From Haplodiscus bocki (Eukaryota): a DNA stretch of 64,000 nt. The notes beneath the pieces are model-generated. The model did no database searches. It saw only the letters and a list, made by a program, of their open reading frames with translations, and was not told the DNA's origin. Positions within the stretch are counted from its first letter, which is position 1. Every line of letters starts with the position of its first letter. The translations under genes were made by a program, and so were the position numbers. Location: positions 79,732,001 through 79,796,000 of the forward strand of contig OZ296648.1 of the NCBI GenBank assembly GCA_965655095.1, written 5' to 3'. Shown piece by piece: positions 2,925-36,000 of this stretch.

Positions 2925-3771
2925 AATCCCAAATTTTTTCAGAACTTATTTGTTTGTTTTCCAGGTTAACTTCGACTTTTTCAATAATGATTAATTATAA
3001 CGCTCAGGTAGACTAATATTCTGATAAGCTGGTATTGTATCTTTATGGACTTTAGTAATTTCGTGTATTTTATAACTCTAGTTAATTGTCTCTCCTTGTG
3101 AGGATGTTTTTGTTATATCTGCTGTTCTAACGAGATCTCCTGATTTTTAATCTAGTTTTGTTTATTTTCTTTTGATTAAAAAGAATTGGTATACGTATAT
3201 ATTCTTAAAAAAACTTGGATTGTGTTGATTTGGTGGCAGAATGTATTCTGTTAAAAAATTGCCTTGTTTTTGTGGGTGAAACGTCAGTACAATTACCATC
3301 ATACTGTTCAAAAACAGATTTTCATGGAAGATTTGTAAAAGTACCCTTAAAGATTTGAAAAACACCATTAAAGCTCCAAAGAGGTATTCCACGTTTTTCC
3401 GGACCATCTTTCAAGGTTTTTGGTTTGTAAGAGATTAGTAAAGATTTCCTGTACAAATTCTTTCCCTGGTCTGTCTCAATCGAAGCTGGTTTTTTTGAAG
3501 TCAGCAAAACATTGTCAAAAAAATTTGTATTGGGTTGAGCATTTTTGCTTTTCAAAAGATCTGTCCATGCAAATTTTGAGAAATTGTCAATCATATTCAA
3601 AACATATCTATAACCTGTAATTTTTTCAGGGCCGTAACCAAATAAATCTGATATATCTAAACTCCAAGTGTCATCAATAAGATAATCGTCAGTGTTGTTG
3701 CTGATATTTTTCTTTTTTGGTGCCTTAGAAAAAATCTGAGCTATATATTTACAAAATGCTCTCTGAGTCAT
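2925..3771 (-). pseudogene. Polinton retroviral-like (rve) integrase
   Basis: ORF 3322-3771 has IDDTWSLDISDL...GYRYVLNMIDNFSKFAW...SIETDQGK (first two catalytic Asp motifs). A frameshifted C-terminus has GDLVRTADI near 3140. Confidence 0.9.
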
Positions 3772-18600: not shown

Positions 18601-19509
18601 ACCTAGCAGCTACTCTAAGCTAGGAATGAATATTTTGTTACGTGCGCATTACGTCGCTACCGATCTGGTGACGTCACAAAACTTTCAACCAATCCGCTGT
18701 GCTTTTACGCTTTTTCACTTTGGACGGACACGGGACGTCTACGTAGCCACCAGAATCATTCTCCTCAGTAGTACTGCGGAAGGCAGTGCTACAAGCGGCT
18801 ACGTAGTCGCCACGGAACGCTCTGGCCAAAGTGAGGCGTGAGCTAGTAAAAACGTGGAACGGGCTAGGAAAAAGCCTAGTTTCGTTCCAAAACTGGACTA
18901 AATCGATGCAATAGTATTACCAAGCATGTAATTATGATATTCTATGATTATTTTAGTGTATTTTACTTAATTTTGGTGCATTTTCCAATACTTTCCTCAT
19001 ATGGAAAATCTTTTTGATCATTTGTTTATGTTATTATTTATTGTGTCGGCGCGGGAATAAGCACTTTGATATCCATTTCCGACTGATGAGACCCGTAAAT
19101 TTTCCGTCGAAAGATGGAAAAGACGCGGTCTATAAAGGAAGAAATGGAGGGAAAGTTGTTTATTTCCCGCCAGAGTCGGCATATTTTCTTTGTAATTACT
19201 ATGATTAAAGTACTTTTCCGTACTTTGTACCTTTACTTGGCGTGTAAACAATTATGTTTCCCGCCAAGGAAAAGGTATAAATAGGAGAAACGAAAAAACT
19301 AAAGGGAGATCCTTAATATCACTTTGATTATCAGTTGACTGTACTGATTGCGACTAGTTGTTTCTTTTAAAGATTCACATTTTTGCTATACTCTCAAGTT
19401 TAATAACAAATACAAAACTAGAAAATGGCACTCGGAGAGCGCAGATCCCGCGAAAGCCCTTAATCTTTCCCTCGCCAAACAAACAAACAAACAGACAAAC
19501 AAAAAATTT

Positions 19510-19583
19510 TGGCCACACAGAGGTTCGAACTCTCGACCCTAGCGTTTTTAGCACAATTCTCTTACCGACTGAGCTATAGGGCC
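19510..19583 (-). tRNA. tRNA-like gene or pseudogene, AAA anticodon, first array copy
   Basis: 74 nt with A box TAGCTCAGTCGG, B box GTTCGAAC and downstream oligo-T. It has a few stem mismatches. Confidence 0.45.
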
Positions 19584-20086
19584 GTACTAATCTGATTACT
19601 AATATCAGATTACTATTATCAGATTAACAAGAATTTTTGGCCACACAGAGGTTCGAACTCTCGACCGTCGCATTTTTAGCACAAGGCTCTTACCGACTGA
19701 GTTATTGGGCCGTACTAGTGTGATTACTCTTATCCGATTACTAATGTCAGATTACTATTATCCTGGATATGATTGAAATCCTGATCCAATCAGGATCTCC
19801 GGATAACTGTTATCAGGATCCAACATGAAATCCTGGACCGTAACCCAGTCGTTGATATACAATACCTCCTATTTTGAGAAATCCTGCTAACAAACAAACA
19901 AACGAACAAACAAACAAACAAACAAACAGACAAACAAAAAATTTTGGACACACAGAGTTTCGAACTGTCGACCCTCGCGTTTTTAGCACAATGCTCTTAC
20001 CGACTGAGCTATAGGGCCGTACGCATGTGATTACTAATATCAGATTACTATTATAAGATTACTATTATCAGATTAACAAAATCTTT

Positions 20087-20160
20087 TGCCCACACAGAGG
20101 TTCGATCTCTCGACCGTCGCGTTATTAGCACAATGCTTTTACCGACTGAGCTATTGGGCC
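20087..20160 (-). pseudogene. tRNA-Ile(AAT) pseudogene copy in array
   Basis: The only copy with loop CT-AAT-AA (GTGCTAATAACGCG, the canonical Ile-AAT arm). Its B box is mutated to GATCGAAC. Confidence 0.65.
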
Positions 20161-21079
20161 GTACTAATGTGATTACTCTTATCAGACTACTATTGTCAGA
20201 TTACTATTATCCTCGATCTGATTGAAATCCTGATACAATCAGGATATCTGGATAACTGTTATCAGGATCCAACATGAAATCCTGGACCGTAACCCAGTCG
20301 TTGATATACAATACCTCCTATTTTGAGAAATTCTGCTAACAAACAAACAAACCAACAAACAAACAAATAAACAGACAAACAAAAAATTTTGGCCACACAG
20401 AGTTTCGAACTCTCGACCCTCGCGTTTTTCGCACAATGCTCTTACCGACTGAGGTATAGGTCCGTACTTATCTGATTACTAATATCAGATTACTATTATC
20501 AGATTACTAATATTAATTTAACAAAAAATTTTGACCACACAGAGATTCGAACTCTCGACCGTCGCGTTTTTAGCACAATGCTCTTACCGACTGAGCTAGA
20601 GGGCCGTAAGCATCTGATTAATCTTATCAGATTACTATTATCAGATTATTTTTATCAAATTAACAAAAAATTTTGGCCACAGAGAGGTTCGAACTCTCAA
20701 CCCTCGCGTTTTTAGCACAATGCTCTTACCGACTGAGCTAGAGGGCCGTACGCATCTGATTACTCTTATCAGATTACTATTGTCAGATTACTATTATCCT
20801 GGATCTGATTGAAATCCTGATCCAAAAATCCGACCAGTAGTTCATGGGAAACAGTTATCCGGATCTCAGATCCGGATTTCATTTCGGATCACGCCCAACT
20901 TTGAACTCCGTCTTCCTATGATCATTACCTCCCTACTCACCAAATTTCGTCAAAATCCGACCAGTAGTTTATGAGAAATCCTGCTAACAAACAAACAAAC
21001 AAACAGACAAACAGACACACGAAGGTGATTGCAATATCCCGCTTTTCGCGGGATAATGATCAATAAATAATAACATAAA

Positions 21080-23493
21080 AAAATGGCACTCGGAGAGTGC
21101 AGATCCCGCGAAAGCCCTTGATCTTTTCCTCGCCAAACAAACAAACAGACAAACAAAAAAATTTGGCCACACAGAGGTTCGAACTCTCGACCCTCGCATT
21201 TTTAGCACAATGCTTTTACGGACTGAGCTATAGGACCTTTGTAATCTGATTACTCTTATCGGATTACTATTGTCAGATTACTATTATCCTGGATCTGATT
21301 GAAATTCTGATCCAATCAGGATCTCCGGATAACTGTTATCAGGATCCAACAGGATGACCTGGATCGTAACCCAGTCGTTGATATCCATTACCTCCTTTTT
21401 TTGAGAAATCCTGCCAACAAACAAACAAACAAACAGACAAACAAAAAAGTTTTGCCACACAGAGGTTCGAACTCTCGACCTTCGCCTTGTTAGCACAATG
21501 CTCTTACCGACTGAGCTATAGGGCCGTAATTATCTGATCACTATTATCAGATTACTATTATCAGATTACTATTATCAGATTACAATTATCAGATTACCGA
21601 AAAATTTTGGCCACACAGAGGTTCGAAATCTCGACCTTCGCGTTTTTAGCACAATGCTCTTACCGACTGAGCTATAGGGCCGTACTTATCTGATTACTCT
21701 TATCAGATTACTATTATCAGACTACTATTTTCCTGGATCTGATTGAAATCCTGATCTAATCAGTATCTCCGGATAACTGTTATCAGGATCCAACAGGATA
21801 TCCTGGATCGTAACCAAGTCGTTGATATACATTACCTCCTATTTTGAGAAATCCTGCTAACAAACAAACAAACAAACAAACAGACAAACAAAAAATTTTT
21901 GCCACACAGGGGTCCGAACTCTCGACCTTCGCGTTTTTAGCACAATGCTCTTACCGACTGAGCTATAGTGCCGTAATTATCTAATTACTCATCAGATTAC
22001 TATTATCAGATTACTATTATCAGATTACTATTATCAGATTACTATTATCAGATTACCGAAAAATTTTGGCTACACAGAGGTTCGAAATCTCGACCTTCGC
22101 GTTTCTAGCACAATGCTCTTACCGACTGAGCTATATGGCCGTACTTATCTGATTACTCTTATCAGATTACTATTATCAGACTACTATGTTCCTGGATCTG
22201 ATTGAAATCCTGATCTAATCAGGATCTCCGGATAACTGTTAATATGGATCCAACAGGATATCCTGGATCGTAACCAAGTCATTGATGTACATTACCTCCT
22301 ATTTTGAGAAGTCCTGCTAACAAACAAACAAACAAACAAACAAACGAACAGACAAACAAAACATTTTGTCCACACAGAGGTTCCAACTCTCGACGTTCGC
22401 GTTTTTAGCACAATGTTCTTAACGACTGAGCTATAGGGCTGTACTCATCAGATTTTTCTAATCAGATTGTTTTTATCAGATTACTGTAATCAGATTACTA
22501 TTATCAGATTACTATTAGCAGATTAAAATAAAATTTTGGTCACACAGGGGTTCGCACTCTCAACCCTTGCGTTTTTAGCACAATTCTCTTAACGCCTGAG
22601 CTATTGGGCCGTACTCATCTCATTACTCTTATCAGATTACTATTTTCCTGGATCTGATTGAAATCCTGATCCAATCAGCATCTCCGGATAACTGTTATCA
22701 GGATCCAACAGGATATCCTGGATCGTAACCCAGTCATTGATATACATTACCTTCTATTTTGAGAAATCCTGCAAACAAACAAACAAACAAACAAACAAAC
22801 AAACAAACAGACAATCAAAAACATTCGTCCACACAGAGGTTCCAGCTCTCGTCCCTCGCTTTTTTAGCACAATGCTCTTACCGACTGAGCTAGAGGGCCG
22901 TACTCATCTGATTACTCTTATCAGATTCCTATTATCAGATTTTTATTATCAAATTAACAAAAAACTTTGGCCACACAGATGTTTGAACTCTCGACCCTCG
23001 CGTTTTTAGCACAATGCTCTTACCGACTGAGCTGTGGCGCCGTACGTATCTGATTACTAATATCAGATTACTATTATCAGATTACTATTATCAGATTAAC
23101 AAAAAATTTTGGCCACACAGAGGTTCGAACTCTCGACCCTCGCGTTTTTAGCACAATGCTCTTACCGACTGAGCTATACGGCCGTACTGCTCTGCTTACT
23201 CTTATCAGATTAGTATTATCAGATTACTATTATCCAGGATCTGATTGAAATCTTGATCCAAAAATCCGACCAGTAGTTCATGAGAAACAGTTATCCGGAT
23301 CTCAGATCCGGATTTCAATTCGGATCACGCCCAACTTTGAACTCCGTCTTCCTATGATCATTACCTCCCTACTCACCAAATTTCGTCAAAATCCGACCAG
23401 TAGTTTATGAGAAATCCTGCTAACAAACAAACAAACAAACAGACAAACAGACACACGAAGGTGATCGCAATATCCCGCTTTTCGCGGGATAAT
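21080..23493 (+). mobile_element. Helentron-type non-autonomous element, copy 2, carrying 10 tRNA-derived units
   Basis: Same termini as copy 1 (AAATGGCACTCGGAGAGTGCAGATCCCGCGAAAG; hairpin at 23471-23491), arranged head-to-tail with copy 1. Confidence 0.75.
23110..23183 (-). tRNA. tRNA-like gene, Ile(AAT)-type body with AAA anticodon (best-folding copy)
   Basis: Acceptor GGCCGTA/TGTGGCC, D arm GCTC/GAGC, anticodon stem TTGTG/CGCGA with loop CT-AAA-AA, T arm GAGAG-TTCGAAC-CTCTG (one mismatch), A73. A and B boxes are intact and a T6 run follows. Function is unproven. Confidence 0.55.
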
Positions 23494-23534
23494 AATTCAG
23501 TCTTCATAACTGCGTAGCATTTTCCCTTCAAAAA

Positions 23535-25094
23535 ATGGCAACGCTGAGAAACAAACGAAAGTTGGCAGCCGTTAAAAGAGAAACACAAGAGGAACATCCT
23601 AGGAACGGCCAGTCACGAAACACGTCCGTTCCTAGAATTAACGAGGAATATATCACACAACTTTCTGAAGAGATAGAAGGCAGAGTCAGTAAAAAACTGT
23701 CCCAAGAGTTCAGCAGGACAAAGTCCCGCATTTTGGGTGCTTTGTCTAAATTAGACGAGTTTCTCTTGAACCAACAGATAACGACGCATTCCGGAACCAG
23801 TCCGGGAACATTCCGAAACACAAACGTGGATAACCAGGGAACGAATGAGGACGACTGCATGAGTGACCCTTATCCTGAAGCAGGCCTCTTCCGCAGTCAG
23901 ACTACACAAAACTCTGGCCAAGAAGTTGGTCCCTACATGGTGACAGGAGTTATAGAAGAGACTCACGACGGTCCTTACATGGTGAAGGGAGTTATAGAAG
24001 AGATTCACGACGGTCCTTACATGGTGACAGGAGCTACAGAAGAAGTTCGCAATGGCCGTGACATGGTGACAGCAGTTCAAGAAGAGATTCCCTACTGCTC
24101 CTCTGGAATTTCCTCAGGAAAACAAAAGAAGGCGCGCTCCACAAGTCAGCCACAATTTCGCAGTGAGAACACCCCTGCGACAATTGAAGCCGACCAGATT
24201 TTGTTGGCCCTTCAGCAATTGGCGATGAACAGTAATTCAGCCAATTTCAACAACAATATCACAAAAATCTCGAAACTGCCTAAGTCCCTCACGACAACAA
24301 TGCCCACATTCGACGGGAAATCAGAGAAATTTGAACTGTTTGAAGATCTATTCCAAACGAGTTTAAAAATCCACAATCAGCTAACAGAAGAAGACAAAAT
24401 ATACTATTTCCACTCTCTCATGCGTGGTGATGCGCTGCAGATGTTTAAAAACATCACCAGCCCCAACAGAGAGAATTTGGGAGAAATCCTGACTGTGTTC
24501 CGTATAAAATACGTGAAACACCAGTCAATGGCTACGGCAAAACCCAAATTTCAACAACTAATATTCAATCCAGTGAACAAGAAGTTAATTGAGTTTTTGG
24601 ACGAACTCCAGAAATTGGCAAAAGATGCGTTCGGAGTTGCTGCCCAAGCAATCATTGACCAATTCATATATGCCAAGATGCCTCCACACCTGGAGAAATC
24701 AATAAACCAGGCCCACTTGGAGAACGGCACGTTTGAACAGATTGTGACACATCTCGAAAGGGAATTAGAGCTTAACAGTTTGGAATATCCTGATGAAACT
24801 CAGATGAACACTGTGACGCACAAACAACAAATTGAAGGCAACCCAGATAATGCTGGAAATATCAACAGTGATACAATCGACTCTAACCCGAACAACCAAA
24901 AAATTAACAAAAAATCTAGAACTCTCTACTCTCCCTGTGAGACATGTGGCAAAACGAACCACTCCACAGAGAGATGTTACGTTGGAGCCAATGCAGCAAA
25001 CAGGCCACTTCCCTGGAAGAACAAACCTCAAGAACAGGACGCACACGACAGTATAACTGGTTGTGTCCAGGCTACAGCTCAACATCTTAACTAG
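23535..25094 (+). CDS. gag: Retrotransposon Gag-like protein (519 aa)
   Basis: The only long intact ORF. Has a capsid-like segment (MPTFDGKSEKFELFEDLF...KIYYFHSLMRGDAL), a CX2CX4HX4C knuckle (CETCGKTNHSTERC) and internal 14-aa repeats. Confidence 0.9.
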   Translation: MATLRNKRKLAAVKRETQEEHPRNGQSRNTSVPRINEEYITQLSEEIEGRVSKKLSQEFSRTKSRILGALSKLDEFLLNQQITTHSGTSPGTFRNTNVDNQGTNEDDCMSDPYPEAGLFRSQTTQNSGQEVGPYMVTGVIEETHDGPYMVKGVIEEIHDGPYMVTGATEEVRNGRDMVTAVQEEIPYCSSGISSGKQKKARSTSQPQFRSENTPATIEADQILLALQQLAMNSNSANFNNNITKISKLPKSLTTTMPTFDGKSEKFELFEDLFQTSLKIHNQLTEEDKIYYFHSLMRGDALQMFKNITSPNRENLGEILTVFRIKYVKHQSMATAKPKFQQLIFNPVNKKLIEFLDELQKLAKDAFGVAAQAIIDQFIYAKMPPHLEKSINQAHLENGTFEQIVTHLERELELNSLEYPDETQMNTVTHKQQIEGNPDNAGNINSDTIDSNPNNQKINKKSRTLYSPCETCGKTNHSTERCYVGANAANRPLPWKNKPQEQDAHDSITGCVQATAQHLN

Positions 25095-33089: not shown

Positions 33090-36000
33090 GAAAAGCGTTC
33101 AACTTACGTGGATACGGCAAGTATTGTTCATTGCAGCTTTTAACAAATCGTCTGAAATACCCGGGTTGAAGTCCCAGAGCAAATCAGCGCTGAACAGCGC
33201 TGTTTCAGAGCTGTTCAGCGCTGGTTTTTTCTGAATCAGCGCTGTTAGCGCTGGATCAAAACGAATTGAGGAACCGACGAAAATGCTTCGTGTAAGTTCG
33301 AAGAGGTATTGGGATCACGAAAAACATGTTCTTTTGGAGTGTACCAGCTATGAAAAAAATCATTCCGGCGAAAATTCAGTCAAAAATTCGAATTGGCGCA
33401 CCCGCCTTTTTTTCATGCTTCTTGGTCGCACGTGACCTGTAGAATACTAAAAAAAGGCTGAAATGTAGGGTTTTGAGTGAAAAGTGGACTGAAAAAAATG
33501 CAAAAGTTGTGTTAATTAGTGTTTTTTTTTACTATTTCGGACCAAAATGTGACGAATTTTGACCAGCGCTGAACAGCGCTGAAACAGCTCTGTTTCAGAG
33601 AAAAACAGCTCTGAAACAGCACTGAACAGGGCTGATTATCTCAAAGCGTCAGATCTAAGGTTTCCTGGAGAAAACTCCTGAGAAAAGTTCAAGCTTTGTC
33701 AAAACGGAAAAAGATCTAAATTTCCAGAGAGCTTAAGATCTGGGGTTTCCTGGGAAAAATCTGCGTAAAGAGAACAAGATATAGTTTTGCCATGACGGAA
33801 TAATTTCTAAATTTCCAGGAAAAATATGATCCAAGCTCTCCGGCAGAAATTTGCGAAAAGACTCAAATCTAAATTTCCAGAGAGCTTCAGATCAGAGGTT
33901 TGCTGGAGAAAATTAGCGGAAAAAGAAAGATCTAATTTTGGCATAACGGAATATTATCTAAATTTCCAGAAAGCGTTAGATCTAAACTTTCCCGCAGAAA
34001 TTTGCGGAAAAAGACTAAAATCTAAATTTCCAGAGATCTCAAGATCTGGGGTTTCCTGGAGAAAATCTGCGAAAAGAGGATAAGATCTACTTTTTGCGGA
34101 AAAATAATGAGATTGCAATTCCCAGAAACCGTAAGACTTGAGCTTTCCTGCAGAAGTTTTGCGAAAAATGAAAGATCTAGTATTTGCCGAGAAGCAATAA
34201 GATATAATTATCCAGAAAGCGTAATATCTAAGTTTCCCTGAAGAAAAATTGCAAAAGTCCGGTGAGGACAAGAAATGGAAGACAGATTTCAGGGATGTTC
34301 AGCGTTGTCTCAGGGGAAAATCAGGAATGATAAGAGCTGTTTCAGAAGGCTTCAGTGGTTATCAGCTCTGTTTCAAGGAAAATCAGAGCTGAAACAGCAC
34401 TGATTCAGAGCTGATTTTTTTGCTCCGAAATTTTGGTTTTTCAGCGCTGTTTCAGAGAAAATCAGCGCTGTTCAGCTCTGTTTCAGAGAAAATCAGCGCT
34501 GAAACAGCTCTGATTCAGCGCTGATTTTTTGCTCTGAAAATTTGGTGTTTCAGCGCTGTTTCAGAGAAAATCAGCTGTTTCAAAGAAAATCAGCACTGAA
34601 ACAGCTGATTCAACGCTGATTTTTTGCTCTGAAAATTTCCAGTTTCAGAGCTGTTTCCGAGAAAATCAGCGCTGTTCAGCTCTGAATCAGCTGTTTCAGA
34701 GAAAATCAGCGCTGTTTCAGCGCTGATTTTTAGCTCTGAAAATTTGCGTTTTCAGCGCTGTTCAGAGCTGAATCAGCGCTGTTCAGAGATTTTCAGGTAA
34801 TGAACAGCGCTGAAACAGACCTGAAAGTATTCTGAATCAGAGCTGAGTCAACCCGGGTAGCTTTGAAATTTAACTTTATTGTTGCCACTAAACTGCAAAA
34901 TTTGTACTTAAGCGTTGCAATCTTCCTTAAATAACTTTTTCCCGACCAACTATCGGAACTATCGGACCACTTACCTTCGGCACCTTCCGACATTTATCTT
35001 CCCTAAAATCCAGAAGCCGTATTCTTTCTTGTTGGAATCCCGCTGAAGTGAAGAACTGCAAAAGTGCACAAATTGTTGTTGAAGTAAAAAACACTACGTG
35101 AAAACACACGCTTAACCCTAGTTTGCACTAATTGTATTAACCTGCTGTCTGAAACTTTCATGCAAAATCCCTGACTTTTCCGTCTTTTCCAAAAAAGTTT
35201 TTTCCATGCCTATTTGTTACATGCATGTCACGACAATCACAATGCAAGTTCTCTCTGCAATGTCAAATGGACCAACCAATTAAATTTAGACAGCTTAAAC
35301 GGACGAATTTTTCTATCAAGTTAATATTAAGTAGTTTGGAATGGCTGAAGTTTGTACTAAACATGAATACAGGAAGAAACACAGGAAGCGAATACTGAAA
35401 ATCTTTTTAAATAGAAATATGAATCATCATATTTTGTTAAAAGTTATACTGACGGGTCTTAACAAATCACAATATTATTTAATGCTTAGTCATCTCTTTA
35501 TATTTTCGGAACTCAGCAAACAACTTTGGAGAACTGTGTCCATCAAAGAAACAAAAGTTCCTTTCGATACAATCAGTGACGGAAATTTCACAGCAACATT
35601 GAATAAGAAGCGCAGTCGAACTGTGATATTCTCCGTCAGTGTAGCGCGTAAAAGATTGATCGAAGTTAAAACAAAACACTTTTACAAAAAAAATCCAATT
35701 CTGACAAAAAACATCTAGATGGATACTTTGTCGGAAGAATTCAAGCCGGTAGCTTCAGAGAGTTATGAGTTTGAAAATGGACAAAACGTAGTAATTAATT
35801 GGACGTTTTGGCATGTTCAGCCTATCAGCACAGCAATTTAATTAACAAAACTATAGAATTTTCCATCTAAAAGTAATCCAAAACTATATCACCGTCAATT
35901 CAAACCTTGGTAGAAAAATTCATTTCTCTAATTTTTTTCAGGGAAGAGTTGGAGAACTGAGGCATCTCAATACTAATGGCACGGTTTTCACTCTTGGGTT

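What the first reader, a model, noticed from the sequence alone, without database searches (positions are those of the whole stretch)
19510..23183. Ile-type tRNA body with anticodon AAA, plus AAT, AAC and AGA variants
Seen: 14 of 17 copies have anticodon AAA. Single copies have AAT (20087), AAC (21452) and AGA (22067). The body matches eukaryotic tRNA-Ile(AAT) and has T20, not the G20 determinant used by PheRS. Known: tRNA-Phe(AAA) is essentially absent from eukaryotes, and I34 would read UUU, UUC and UUA. Inference: the switch preceded amplification. The RNAs are either uncharged (making amplification tolerable) or a source of mistranslation or tRNA fragments. Arms are better kept than a random pseudogene would need, but most copies have a T-stem G-G and an acceptor mismatch.
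Basis: partly seen in the sequence, partly recalled or inferred. Interest (0 to 1): 0.7.

Follow-up and report, generated by a model that had tools for sequence, protein, structure and literature searches.

The report
Decaying tRNA-Ile copies inside a transposon
The 17 odd "tRNA-Phe(AAA)" genes are dead, freely mutating copies of an isoleucine tRNA gene that a high-copy rolling-circle-type transposon carries as its internal repeat, so they reflect transposon spread and not a new decoding system.

Summary
There are 17 tRNA-like 74-nt units on the minus strand: 14 with anticodon AAA and one each with AAT, AAC and AGA. All have T20, and most share a T-stem G·G and an acceptor C·U mismatch.

The units are the internal tandem repeat of two adjacent copies (7 and 10 units) of a non-coding mobile element with fixed ends. 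I recovered the same element at 11 other places with unrelated flanks, including a second sample, and read data show an "empty site".

Across 126 units the consensus is unchanged and AAA is ancestral. The body is 80% identical to a eukaryotic tRNA-Ile(AAT).

Since then the units have drifted neutrally:
- Stems, loops, anticodon and promoter boxes mutate at the same rate.
- That rate is no slower than in the element's non-tRNA modules.
- Stem changes break pairs at the random expectation, and there is no covariation.
- The AAT, AAC and AGA copies are background mutations.

Expression could not be tested because no RNA runs were available. First-stage notes report the same element type elsewhere in this genome. 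Interest is moderate, mainly as a Helitron/Helentron-like element carrying a tRNA-derived Pol III unit.

The parts
19418..21056 (+). Element B: complete non-coding mobile element holding 7 tRNA-like units in antisense orientation.
   Evidence: It has the same ends (CTAGAAAATGGCAC... to ...CGCGGGATAA) as 10 other copies that sit in unrelated flanks. Its left boundary matches the empty-site joints at 19417.
21076..23492 (+). Element A: second copy, head-to-tail with B, holding 10 tRNA-like units. Its first 9 nt have diverged (TAAAAAAAT instead of CTAGAAAAT).
   Evidence: Its right boundary matches the empty-site joints at 23493/23494.
19418..19509 (+). Left module of B. It holds the hairpin GCACTCGGAGAGCGC (19428-19442), an inverted-repeat arm ATCCCGCGAAAG (19445-19456) and a (CAAA)n microsatellite.
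21085..21163 (+). Left module of A. It holds a perfect 6-bp hairpin GCACTC/GAGTGC (21086-21100), an inverted-repeat arm (21103-21114) and a (CAAA)n microsatellite.
20748..21056 (+). Right module of B (309 nt). It holds 14-nt minisatellite repeats, the long spacer, a (CAAA)n run and the terminal 8-bp palindrome at 21035-21055.
   Evidence: This is the best conserved part of the element, with 4.1% mean pairwise divergence among 10 elements.
23184..23492 (+). Right module of A (309 nt), with the terminal palindrome at 23471-23491.
23110..23183 (-). tRNA-like unit A1, anticodon AAA. It is the best copy, with 20 of 21 pairs.
   Evidence: (52 bits).
22968..23041 (-). tRNA-like unit A2, anticodon AAA, 17 of 21 pairs.
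22826..22899 (-). tRNA-like unit A3, anticodon AAA, 16 of 21 pairs.
22537..22610 (-). tRNA-like unit A4, anticodon AAA, 15 of 21 pairs. It is the most decayed copy.
22367..22440 (-). tRNA-like unit A5, anticodon AAA, 16 of 21 pairs.
22067..22140 (-). tRNA-like unit A6, anticodon AGA.
21899..21972 (-). tRNA-like unit A7, anticodon AAA.
21608..21681 (-). tRNA-like unit A8, anticodon AAA.
21452..21525 (-). tRNA-like unit A9, anticodon AAC.
21164..21237 (-). tRNA-like unit A10, anticodon AAA.
20674..20747 (-). tRNA-like unit B1, anticodon AAA.
20532..20605 (-). tRNA-like unit B2, anticodon AAA.
20390..20463 (-). tRNA-like unit B3, anticodon AAA.
20087..20160 (-). tRNA-like unit B4, anticodon AAT. 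The corresponding unit type in locus L013 has ATA, so this is a private change and not an Ile relic.
19945..20018 (-). tRNA-like unit B5, anticodon AAA.
19638..19711 (-). tRNA-like unit B6, anticodon AAA.
19510..19583 (-). tRNA-like unit B7, anticodon AAA.
19300..19417 (.). Left flank of the insertion. It is itself a high-copy repeat.
   Evidence: In other genomic copies it is joined directly to 23493/23494, which is the empty-site form (tables 5 and 7).
23494..23600 (.). Right flank of the insertion. It is contiguous with 19417 in the empty-site form.
   Evidence: joints 19417>23494, 19416>23493, 19415>23491 and 19384>23493.

Best explanation
The 17 units are the central tandem repeat of two head-to-tail copies of a high-copy, non-coding, rolling-circle-type (Helitron/Helentron-HINE-like) transposon. 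The founder element picked up a complete nuclear tRNA-Ile(AAT)-type Pol III unit with A box, B box and T-run. That unit already carried T36-to-A (AAT to AAA), an acceptor C5·U mismatch and a T-stem G·G mismatch. It was then multiplied in two ways: by transposition to many loci, and by tandem duplication inside elements (1-12 units per element, with whole elements also arrayed). Since amplification the units evolve as neutral DNA and are tRNA pseudogenes, not a working tRNA-Phe(AAA) family. Shown: the copy structure, the mobile-element context, the ancestral AAA state, the similarity to Ile(AAT) and the neutral substitution pattern. Inferred: capture from a host tRNA-Ile gene, the rolling-circle mechanism, and the absence of a translational role.
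For: Structure: every array is bounded by the same left and right modules at 12 places with unrelated flanks. The tRNA units always lie antisense to the left-to-right direction. One copy comes from a second ENA sample. Read contigs join 19417 directly to 23493/23494, which is an empty site, with no target duplication. 11,422 and 8,683 contigs from two runs of the same organism lie on the stretch.

Ancestry: the consensus of 126 units equals the window consensus. AAA occurs in 83 of 126. Most other anticodons are one step from AAA, and ACG and CAG are two steps. C5·U is present in 113 of 126 and G·G in 109 of 126. The consensus is 59/74 identical to a eukaryotic tRNA-Ile(AAT), against 38-40/76 for tRNA-Glu-like units of the same genome.

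Neutrality in the window: stems 6.0%, loops 6.1%, anticodon 5.9%. There are 34 pair-breaking, 6 pair-keeping and 0 compensatory changes.

Neutrality in 126 units: stems 8.8% and loops 6.6%, with 340 breaking against 83 keeping changes.

Neutrality by rare variants: of 79 rare-variant events, 42 are in stems against 44.8 expected (p=0.57). The keep share is 0.21 against 0.19 for random change. A box has 14 events against 12.8 expected, B box 11 against 11.7, and the anticodon 4 against 3.2.

Between elements: the tRNA units diverge by 6.7-7.7% and the 309-nt right module by 4.1%.

Other: no unit has all 21 pairs. Only 41 of 125 reach the Rfam tRNA threshold, with a maximum of 52 bits.
Against: No RNA data could be examined, so transcription, CCA addition and charging are untested. 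The family is young (4-8% divergence), so weak selection would be hard to see. The consensus keeps good A and B boxes, and 117 of 126 units keep a T-run, so Pol III transcription of some copies remains possible. The Ile assignment rests on one reference tRNA-Ile(AAT) from an unidentified eukaryote and a few non-Ile comparators, not on isotype models. No autonomous partner with the same ends was found, so the rolling-circle classification rests on end structure only. The source tRNA gene in this genome was not seen.
Confidence: 0.8

Rival explanations
1. A working or semi-working tRNA family. Under this reading the units are transcribed, A34 is edited to inosine, and the RNAs are charged (with Ile through the body, or Phe through the anticodon) and read UUU/UUC/UUA, or else serve as a selected source of tRNA fragments.
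For: The consensus has A and B boxes and a terminator, and 117 of 126 units keep a T-run. Unit A1 forms 20 of 21 pairs and scores 52 bits. Discriminator A73 and A35/A36 fit part of the Phe identity set known from the literature.
Against: There is no constraint on stems, anticodon or boxes. Two stem mismatches are fixed in the family. T20 replaces the G20 used by PheRS. A36 removes a known IleRS anticodon determinant. No unit has a full cloverleaf, and the minimum-energy folds of five copies are not cloverleaves. Anticodons drift to ACA, GAA, CAG and AAG and are amplified regardless.
Confidence: 0.04
2. The tRNA module is kept because it helps the transposon at the DNA level, not because of any tRNA function. 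Possible benefits are TFIIIC/Pol III binding that keeps chromatin open or insulated, or a structured single strand that affects rolling-circle termination.
For: Every element found keeps at least one unit. The unit next to the right module, A1, has the highest summed contig depth. First-stage notes report other tRNA types (Glu, Gln) inside similar elements in this genome (unverified). PMC10701932 speculates on such a role for a tRNA near a Helitron end.
Against: A-box and B-box sites mutate at the background rate. Only about half of the units keep intact boxes. Unit number varies from 1 to 12 with no pattern.
Confidence: 0.1
3. A tRNA-derived SINE (retroposon) or SINE-derived satellite, not a DNA transposon.
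For: It has a tRNA-related Pol III head, high copy number and simple-repeat stretches. SINE-derived satellites are known (PMC10702118, PMC9659126).
Against: A Pol III terminator follows each tRNA unit directly, so the body would not be transcribed. The units lie inside the element, not at its 5' end, and occur in 1-12 copies. The ends are hairpin modules shared by all copies. The empty site shows no target duplication. There is no A-rich or LINE-like tail.
Confidence: 0.03
4. An ordinary host tRNA gene cluster, like the tRNA tandem arrays of Hydractinia or Nematostella, that happens to have drifted.
For: tRNA tandem arrays are reported in cnidarians (PMC11067881). Runs sharing parts of this stretch are labelled as coral metagenomes. 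Locus L012 is an array of at least 20 kb.
Against: The arrays sit between the same left and right modules at many unrelated loci and have an empty-site allele. That is the behaviour of a mobile element. Even in L012, the repeating unit is the whole element.
Confidence: 0.03

Closest known systems
HINE / DINE-1-like non-autonomous Helentrons with central satellite-like repeats (Cg_HINE of Crassostrea gigas, PMC7492417; DINE-1 and mite HINEs, PMC4067079)
   Same: Non-coding element with a left module carrying an inverted-repeat arm, a hairpin and a tetranucleotide microsatellite. A short array of tandem repeats sits in the middle. The right module ends in a palindrome. Insertion is into A/T-rich sites without target duplication, copy number is high, and whole elements occur in tandem.
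   Different: The central repeat is a tRNA gene-derived Pol III unit. Neither of those two papers mentions tRNA in its main text. The left inverted-repeat arm lies about 27 nt from the end instead of 2-4 nt. The palindrome ends 1 nt from the 3' end instead of 8-35 nt. No autonomous partner was linked.
Arabidopsis thaliana chromosome 5 tRNA-Cys cluster overlapping annotated Helitrons (PMC10701932)
   Same: tRNA genes repeated in tandem within sequence annotated as Helitron. The authors discuss capture of a tRNA and tandem duplication through failed termination.
   Different: That case is a single locus with mostly expressed tRNA-Cys genes, and Helitron prediction tools did not confirm an element. 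Here there are many dispersed copies with defined ends and an empty site, and the tRNA units are defective.
tRNA-related Pol III satellites (Xenopus satellite 1 and Hydromantes Hy/Pol III, listed in PMC9659126) and SINE-derived satellites (PMC10702118)
   Same: Tandem repeats whose monomer derives from a tRNA-related Pol III promoter region.
   Different: Those derive from SINE retroposons. Here the monomer is a full-length tRNA unit with its own terminator, carried by a DNA-type element.
tRNA tandem arrays of cnidarians (Hydractinia, Nematostella; PMC11067881)
   Same: Evenly spaced head-to-tail tRNA copies with near-identical spacers, possibly in a related host group.
   Different: Those arrays are described as the functional tRNA sets for all 20 amino acids. 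Here there is one defective type with a non-standard anticodon, bounded by transposon ends.

Membership tests
Functional cytoplasmic tRNA gene | A cloverleaf with all stems paired. | tested here: not met
   The family consensus forms 19 of 21 pairs. No unit among 126 has 21 of 21, and the median is 17. The minimum-energy folds of five copies are not cloverleaves.
Functional cytoplasmic tRNA gene | Purifying selection, seen as fewer changes in stems and as compensatory pairs. | tested here: not met
   Stems change at 6.0-8.8% and loops at 6.1-6.6%. No pair in the window has changes on both sides. The share of paired cells is 81.8% against 82.1% after shuffling. Rare-variant events match the random expectation.
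Functional cytoplasmic tRNA gene | A match to the Rfam tRNA model (RF00005) at or above its gathering score. | tested here: inconclusive
   41 of 125 units reach 29 bits. The best scores are 52 bits in the window and 48.6 bits elsewhere.
Functional cytoplasmic tRNA gene | An internal Pol III promoter (A and B boxes) and a T-run terminator. | tested here: met
   All are present in the consensus. The A box is intact in 64 of 126 units, the B box in 68 of 126, and a run of at least four T in 117 of 126.
Functional cytoplasmic tRNA gene | Transcription, end processing, CCA addition and aminoacylation. | not testable with these tools
   No run holding the stretch is on record as RNA, and all runs are available only as contigs.
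Descent from tRNA-Ile(AAT) | A body closer to Ile(AAT) than to other tRNAs. | tested here: met
   The consensus is 59/74 identical to the tRNA-Ile(AAT) at L002:53-126, 41/49 in the 5' two-thirds and 15/17 in the anticodon arm. It is 38-40/76 identical to tRNA-Glu-like units of the same genome. Only one Ile reference was used, and no isotype models were available.
Descent from tRNA-Ile(AAT) | Anticodon AAT. | tested here: not met
   AAT occurs in 2 of 126 units, and both are private changes. AAA is ancestral in the family.
tRNA-Phe | Anticodon GAA and the G20 identity element (yeast and human PheRS, from the literature). | tested here: not met
   The consensus anticodon is AAA. GAA occurs in 10 of 126 units as a derived state. 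Position 20 is T in all 17 window copies.
HINE (non-autonomous Helentron, DINE-1-like) | A non-coding element with defined ends and dispersed copies in different flanks. | tested here: met
   Twelve places have the same ends and unrelated flanks.
HINE (non-autonomous Helentron, DINE-1-like) | Subterminal inverted repeats of 11-15 bp. | tested here: inconclusive
   The left arm at 19445-19456 matches the right arm at 21043-21054 in 11 of 12 positions, and element A shows the same. However, the left arm is about 27 nt from the end, and the right arm is part of the palindrome.
HINE (non-autonomous Helentron, DINE-1-like) | [quoted passage not shown] | tested here: met
   An 8-bp stem at 21035-21055 and 23471-23491 is conserved in all copies.
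HINE (non-autonomous Helentron, DINE-1-like) | A microsatellite after the left module, followed by central tandem repeats. | tested here: met
   A (CAAA)n run is followed by 1-12 tRNA-containing repeats.
HINE (non-autonomous Helentron, DINE-1-like) | Insertion into a T-rich or TT site without target duplication. | tested here: inconclusive
   The empty site reads AAAA|T/A|AATTCAG with no duplication. The host base before the element is A in 10 of 11 copies, and the base after it is T, A or C. Only one empty site was seen.
HINE (non-autonomous Helentron, DINE-1-like) | An autonomous Helentron partner sharing the termini. | not tested
   No Rep/helicase gene is present in the window. A first-stage note reports Helentron-like autonomous elements elsewhere in this genome, but that note is unverified.
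Canonical Helitron (element read on the minus strand) | A 3' CTRR end with a hairpin about 11 nt upstream, followed by host T. | tested here: met
   On the minus strand the element ends with the hairpin GCGCTCTCCGAGTGC, then CATTTTCTAG. The next host base is T in 10 of 11 copies.
Canonical Helitron (element read on the minus strand) | A 5' TC end placed after host A. | tested here: not met
   The 5' end on the minus strand is TTATCCCGCG. The host base before it varies between A, T and G.
tRNA-derived SINE | A tRNA-related head at the 5' end, then a body, a LINE-type or A-rich tail, and target-site duplications. | tested here: not met
   A terminator directly follows each unit. The units are internal and multiple. 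No tail is present, and the empty site shows no duplication.

The most novel reading that the evidence does not exclude
The youngest copies are still active Pol III units. The transposon would then have spread thousands of promoters making a tRNA-Ile-shaped RNA with an AAA anticodon. A fraction of that RNA would enter the tRNA pathway (A34-to-I editing, charging by IleRS or PheRS) or be processed into abundant small RNAs that the element or the host uses.
Probability: 0.07. Interest if true: 0.75.

Novelty: new variant of a known kind. Interest (0 to 1): 0.4.

Why it matters
The finding removes an apparent anomaly. A eukaryote seeming to hold many tRNA-Phe(AAA) genes is explained by transposon-driven copying of one already defective tRNA-Ile gene. 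tRNA annotators should therefore not count such predictions toward this genome's decoding capacity.

The positive point is for transposon biology. This is a well-delimited rolling-circle-type element, with many insertions and an empty site, whose central repeat is a complete tRNA-derived Pol III unit. A 2023 paper (PMC10701932) stated that Helitron capture of a tRNA would be the first case of a non-coding RNA gene captured by this superfamily. The element also shows how a dispersed element seeds satellite-like tRNA arrays, as in the array of at least 20 kb at L012.

Tried and rejected
- **Zebrafish origin.** This was my first guess, from the 26 genome pieces, a chromosome longer than 77 Mb and a TRIM-like gene family. 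The runs that share parts of the stretch are labelled coral or coral-reef metagenomes. I therefore did not use the zebrafish tRNA-seq paper PMC11417395 as evidence.
- **Collection scans with a 19-nt anticodon-arm pattern.** The viral contigs gave 0 hits. The metagenome contigs gave 6 hits. Five are chance matches in unrelated sequence. The sixth, L002, gave a useful tRNA-Ile(AAT) reference.
- **Independent check of the locus.** Contig L007 is 100% identical to the window, so it is the same assembly and gives no independent support.
- **The 176-aa gene called across the array in that assembly.** It contains in-frame stops in the standard code and was not used as a query.
- **Pfam on neighbouring ORFs.** It found only gag-like and integrase fragments, and no Rep/helicase.
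- **Minimum-energy folding.** This is weak evidence, because unmodified tRNAs often misfold in silico.
- **Two scripts using fuzzy regular expressions.** Both timed out and were replaced by BLAST or coordinate-based versions.
Full report
**1.

BLAST of the unit consensus against the window finds exactly 17 full-length copies. All are on the minus strand between 19510 and 23183, and there are none elsewhere in the 64 kb. Reading them in register gives anticodon AAA in 14 copies, AAT at 20087-20160, AAC at 21452-21525 and AGA at 22067-22140.

ARAGORN accepts 8 copies. The Rfam tRNA model accepts 10, at 30-52 bits. Position 20 is T in all copies. The T-stem G·G mismatch is present in 16 of 17 and the acceptor C5·U mismatch in 15 of 17. 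Each unit is followed within a few bases by a T-run.

**2. The units sit inside two copies of a mobile element**

Tandem Repeats Finder shows periods of 128-156 nt nested in a 445-459-nt higher-order repeat. The array is interrupted at about 21060-21085 by a pair of end modules that recur at its outer borders.

Read on the plus strand, each element has these parts in order:
- A left module containing a short hairpin, the arm ATCCCGCGAAAG and a (CAAA)n microsatellite.
- A variable number of repeats, each holding one or more antisense tRNA-like units. The units are separated by a 14-nt minisatellite, a 134-nt spacer and more (CAAA)n.
- A 309-nt right module that ends in an 8-bp palindrome.

Element B (19418-21056) has 7 units and element A (21076-23492) has 10.

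**3. Independent copies**

A spurious 73-aa ORF runs across the left flank, the left module and unit B7. Using it as a protein query gave 29 ORFs from public assemblies. Fetching their contigs gave ten further loci. Nine come from the assembly that also holds the window. One comes from a different ENA sample.

All contain the same element, bounded by the same left and right modules. Each holds 1 to 12 tRNA-like units, always antisense to the left-to-right direction, and the flanks are unrelated. Aligning the junctions fixes the ends as host A | CTAGAAAATGGCAC ... CGCGGGATAA | host T/A. Locus L012 is an array of at least 20 kb made of about 20 whole elements head-to-tail. The A+B pair in the window is a small version of this.

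**4. Evidence from reads**

No run holding the stretch is on record as RNA. The holders are four runs of one coded organism, several coral or coral-reef metagenomes, and a second coded organism.

Laying the contigs of four runs on 19300-23600 placed 11,422 and 8,683 contigs from the two runs of the main organism. The family is therefore very abundant.

Several contigs join 19415-19417 directly to 23491-23494. Loose ends at 19417 continue with the sequence that follows 23493. This is the empty-site form of the flanking repeat. It fixes the insertion borders and shows no target-site duplication (tables 5 and 7).

Contigs from a coral metagenome and from the second organism also hold parts of the element. 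Some hold only 23102-23185, the tRNA unit, between unlike sequence. This could be the source gene, but their letters were not visible.

**5. Classification of the element**

Several features fit the HINE/DINE-1 layout described in PMC4067079 and PMC7492417:
- It is non-coding.
- It has hairpin-bearing ends and an inverted-repeat arm shared between the left and right modules (11 of 12 positions).
- A microsatellite is followed by central tandem repeats.
- It inserts into an A/T-rich site without duplication.
- It tends to form head-to-tail arrays.

Read on the other strand, the element ends with a hairpin, then 10 nt ending in CTAG, then host T. That is the canonical Helitron 3' end, although the 5' end is TT and not TC.

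I therefore call it a rolling-circle-type (Helitron/Helentron-like) non-autonomous element and leave the orientation open. No autonomous partner was linked. First-stage notes report Helentron-like Rep-helicase elements elsewhere in this genome, but I did not check them.

**6. Origin of the unit**

The consensus of 126 units from nine loci is identical to the window consensus. It is 59/74 identical to a eukaryote-type tRNA-Ile(AAT) in metagenome contig L002. Within that, 41 of 49 positions match in the 5' two-thirds and 15 of 17 in the anticodon arm, and the anticodon loop reads CTAATAA against CTAAAAA here. Identity to tRNA-Glu-like units of the same genome is only 38-40/76.

Anticodon counts in the 126 units:

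| Anticodon | Units |
|---|---|
| AAA | 83 |
| ACA | 17 |
| GAA | 10 |
| AAG | 4 |
| CAG | 3 |
| AAT | 2 |
| ATA | 2 |
| ACG | 2 |
| AGA | 1 |
| AAC | 1 |
| CAA | 1 |

AAA accounts for 53 of 61 units outside L012. Most other states are one step from AAA, and ACG and CAG are two. The five extra units in L016 and L017 are all AAA.

The window's AAT unit (B4) corresponds to a unit type that carries ATA in L013. It is therefore a private change and not an Ile relic.

The C5·U mismatch (113 of 126) and the G·G mismatch (109 of 126) are family-wide. The anticodon switch and both stem defects therefore predate amplification.

**7. Test for constraint**

The table gives the share of sites that differ from the consensus.

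| Part | Window, 17 units | All loci, 126 units |
|---|---|---|
| Stems | 6.0% | 8.8% |
| Loops | 6.1% | 6.6% |
| Anticodon | 5.9% | 12.7% |
| A box | 3.4% | 6.0% |
| B box | 7.5% | 7.6% |
| 134-nt spacer | 4.9% | not measured |

- **Effect on pairing, window.** Stem changes break a pair 34 times, keep it 6 times and repair a mismatch 3 times. No pair has changes on both sides, and the share of paired cells equals the shuffled control, 81.8% against 82.1%.
- **Effect on pairing, 126 units.** There are 340 breaking, 83 keeping and 18 repairing changes.
- **Rare variants.** To avoid counting amplified changes several times, I counted only variants carried by one or two units, which gave 79 events. 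Of these, 42 fall in stems against 44.8 expected from site numbers (p=0.57), and the result is the same without CpG sites. The pair-keeping share is 0.21 against 0.19 for random substitution. The A box has 14 events against 12.8 expected, the B box 11 against 11.7, and the anticodon 4 against 3.2.
- **Between elements.** Among ten independent elements, the tRNA units diverge by 6.7-7.7% and the right module by 4.1%.
- **Overall integrity.** No unit forms all 21 pairs. Only 41 of 125 reach the Rfam threshold.

This is the pattern of neutral decay in a young repeat family.

**8. What remains open**

The consensus keeps usable A and B boxes, and 117 of 126 units keep a T-run. Some copies may therefore still be transcribed by Pol III. 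Without RNA data this cannot be decided.

From the established identity rules, efficient charging is unlikely. Eukaryotic PheRS uses G20, G34, A35, A36 and A73, and IleRS reads the anticodon including position 36. The unit has T20 and A34, so it fits PheRS poorly. It has A36, so it fits IleRS poorly. It also has two mismatched stems. This part is inference.

**9. Comparison with known cases**

- HINEs with satellite-like central repeats are well known (PMC7492417).
- tRNA-related Pol III satellites are known from SINEs (PMC9659126, PMC10702118).
- tRNA tandem arrays are reported in cnidarians (PMC11067881).
- A tRNA-Cys cluster overlapping Helitron annotations in Arabidopsis was discussed as a possible first capture of a non-coding RNA gene by a Helitron, but was not confirmed as an element (PMC10701932).

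The present case combines these. It is a well-delimited, high-copy rolling-circle-type element whose central repeat is a full tRNA-derived unit. I rate it a new variant of a known kind.

First-stage notes of this scan describe the same element type at many other places in this genome. Those notes gave me the Helentron lead, which I then tested here.

**10. Verdict**

The inference that the switch preceded amplification is supported. The functional readings (constraint on the arms, meaningful anticodon variants) are not supported. The amplification is explained by the transposon.

My confidence in the main explanation is about 0.8. Interest is about 0.4, mostly for the transposon and not for decoding.

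Noticed in passing
L013:1-1560: A separate tandem repeat whose units are degenerate tRNA-Glu(CTC)-like sequences. ARAGORN calls three of them, at 1-72, 417-488 and 948-1019. This genome therefore holds more than one tRNA-derived repeat family.
   Followed up: partly
L012:1-20282: At least 20 kb of about 20 whole elements head-to-tail, joined by a conserved junction of about 50 nt. Subfamilies with anticodons ACA, GAA, CAG, AAG and ACG have been amplified in blocks, which is satellite-like growth of a transposon.
   Followed up: partly
window 19300-19417 and 23494-23600: The flanks of the insertion are themselves a very high-copy repeat, with summed contig depth as high as or higher than that of the element. 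They occur joined to each other in other genomic copies. The element therefore inserted into another repeat.
   Followed up: partly
window 23535-25094 (+): A 519-aa ORF with weak gag-like matches (DUF1759, E=1.7e-05; Retrotrans_gag). The DNA just before and at its start (AAAAATGGCAACGCTGAG) resembles the left end of the tRNA-carrying element (AAAATGGCACTCGGAG). Many contigs diverge at 23534.
   Followed up: partly
window 19019-19043 versus 21061-21085: A 25-nt stretch overlapping the junction between elements B and A and the diverged start of A recurs as an inverted copy (96% complementary) about 400 nt upstream of element B. I have no explanation for this.
   Followed up: no
window 3322-3771 (-): A 149-aa ORF with a weak integrase core (rve) match, probably a retroelement or DNA-transposon remnant.
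   Followed up: no
L007:2445-2975 (= window 22979-23509): The public assembly's gene caller placed a 176-aa 'gene' across the tRNA array. It has four in-frame stops in the standard code. Such spurious ORFs are in the protein database, and they proved useful for finding other copies of the repeat.
   Followed up: yes
window 33184-34726: Several tandem repeats with periods of 10-153 nt built around TCAGCGCTG-type motifs. They lie inside the region that another first-stage note calls a TRIM-like gene family.
   Followed up: no
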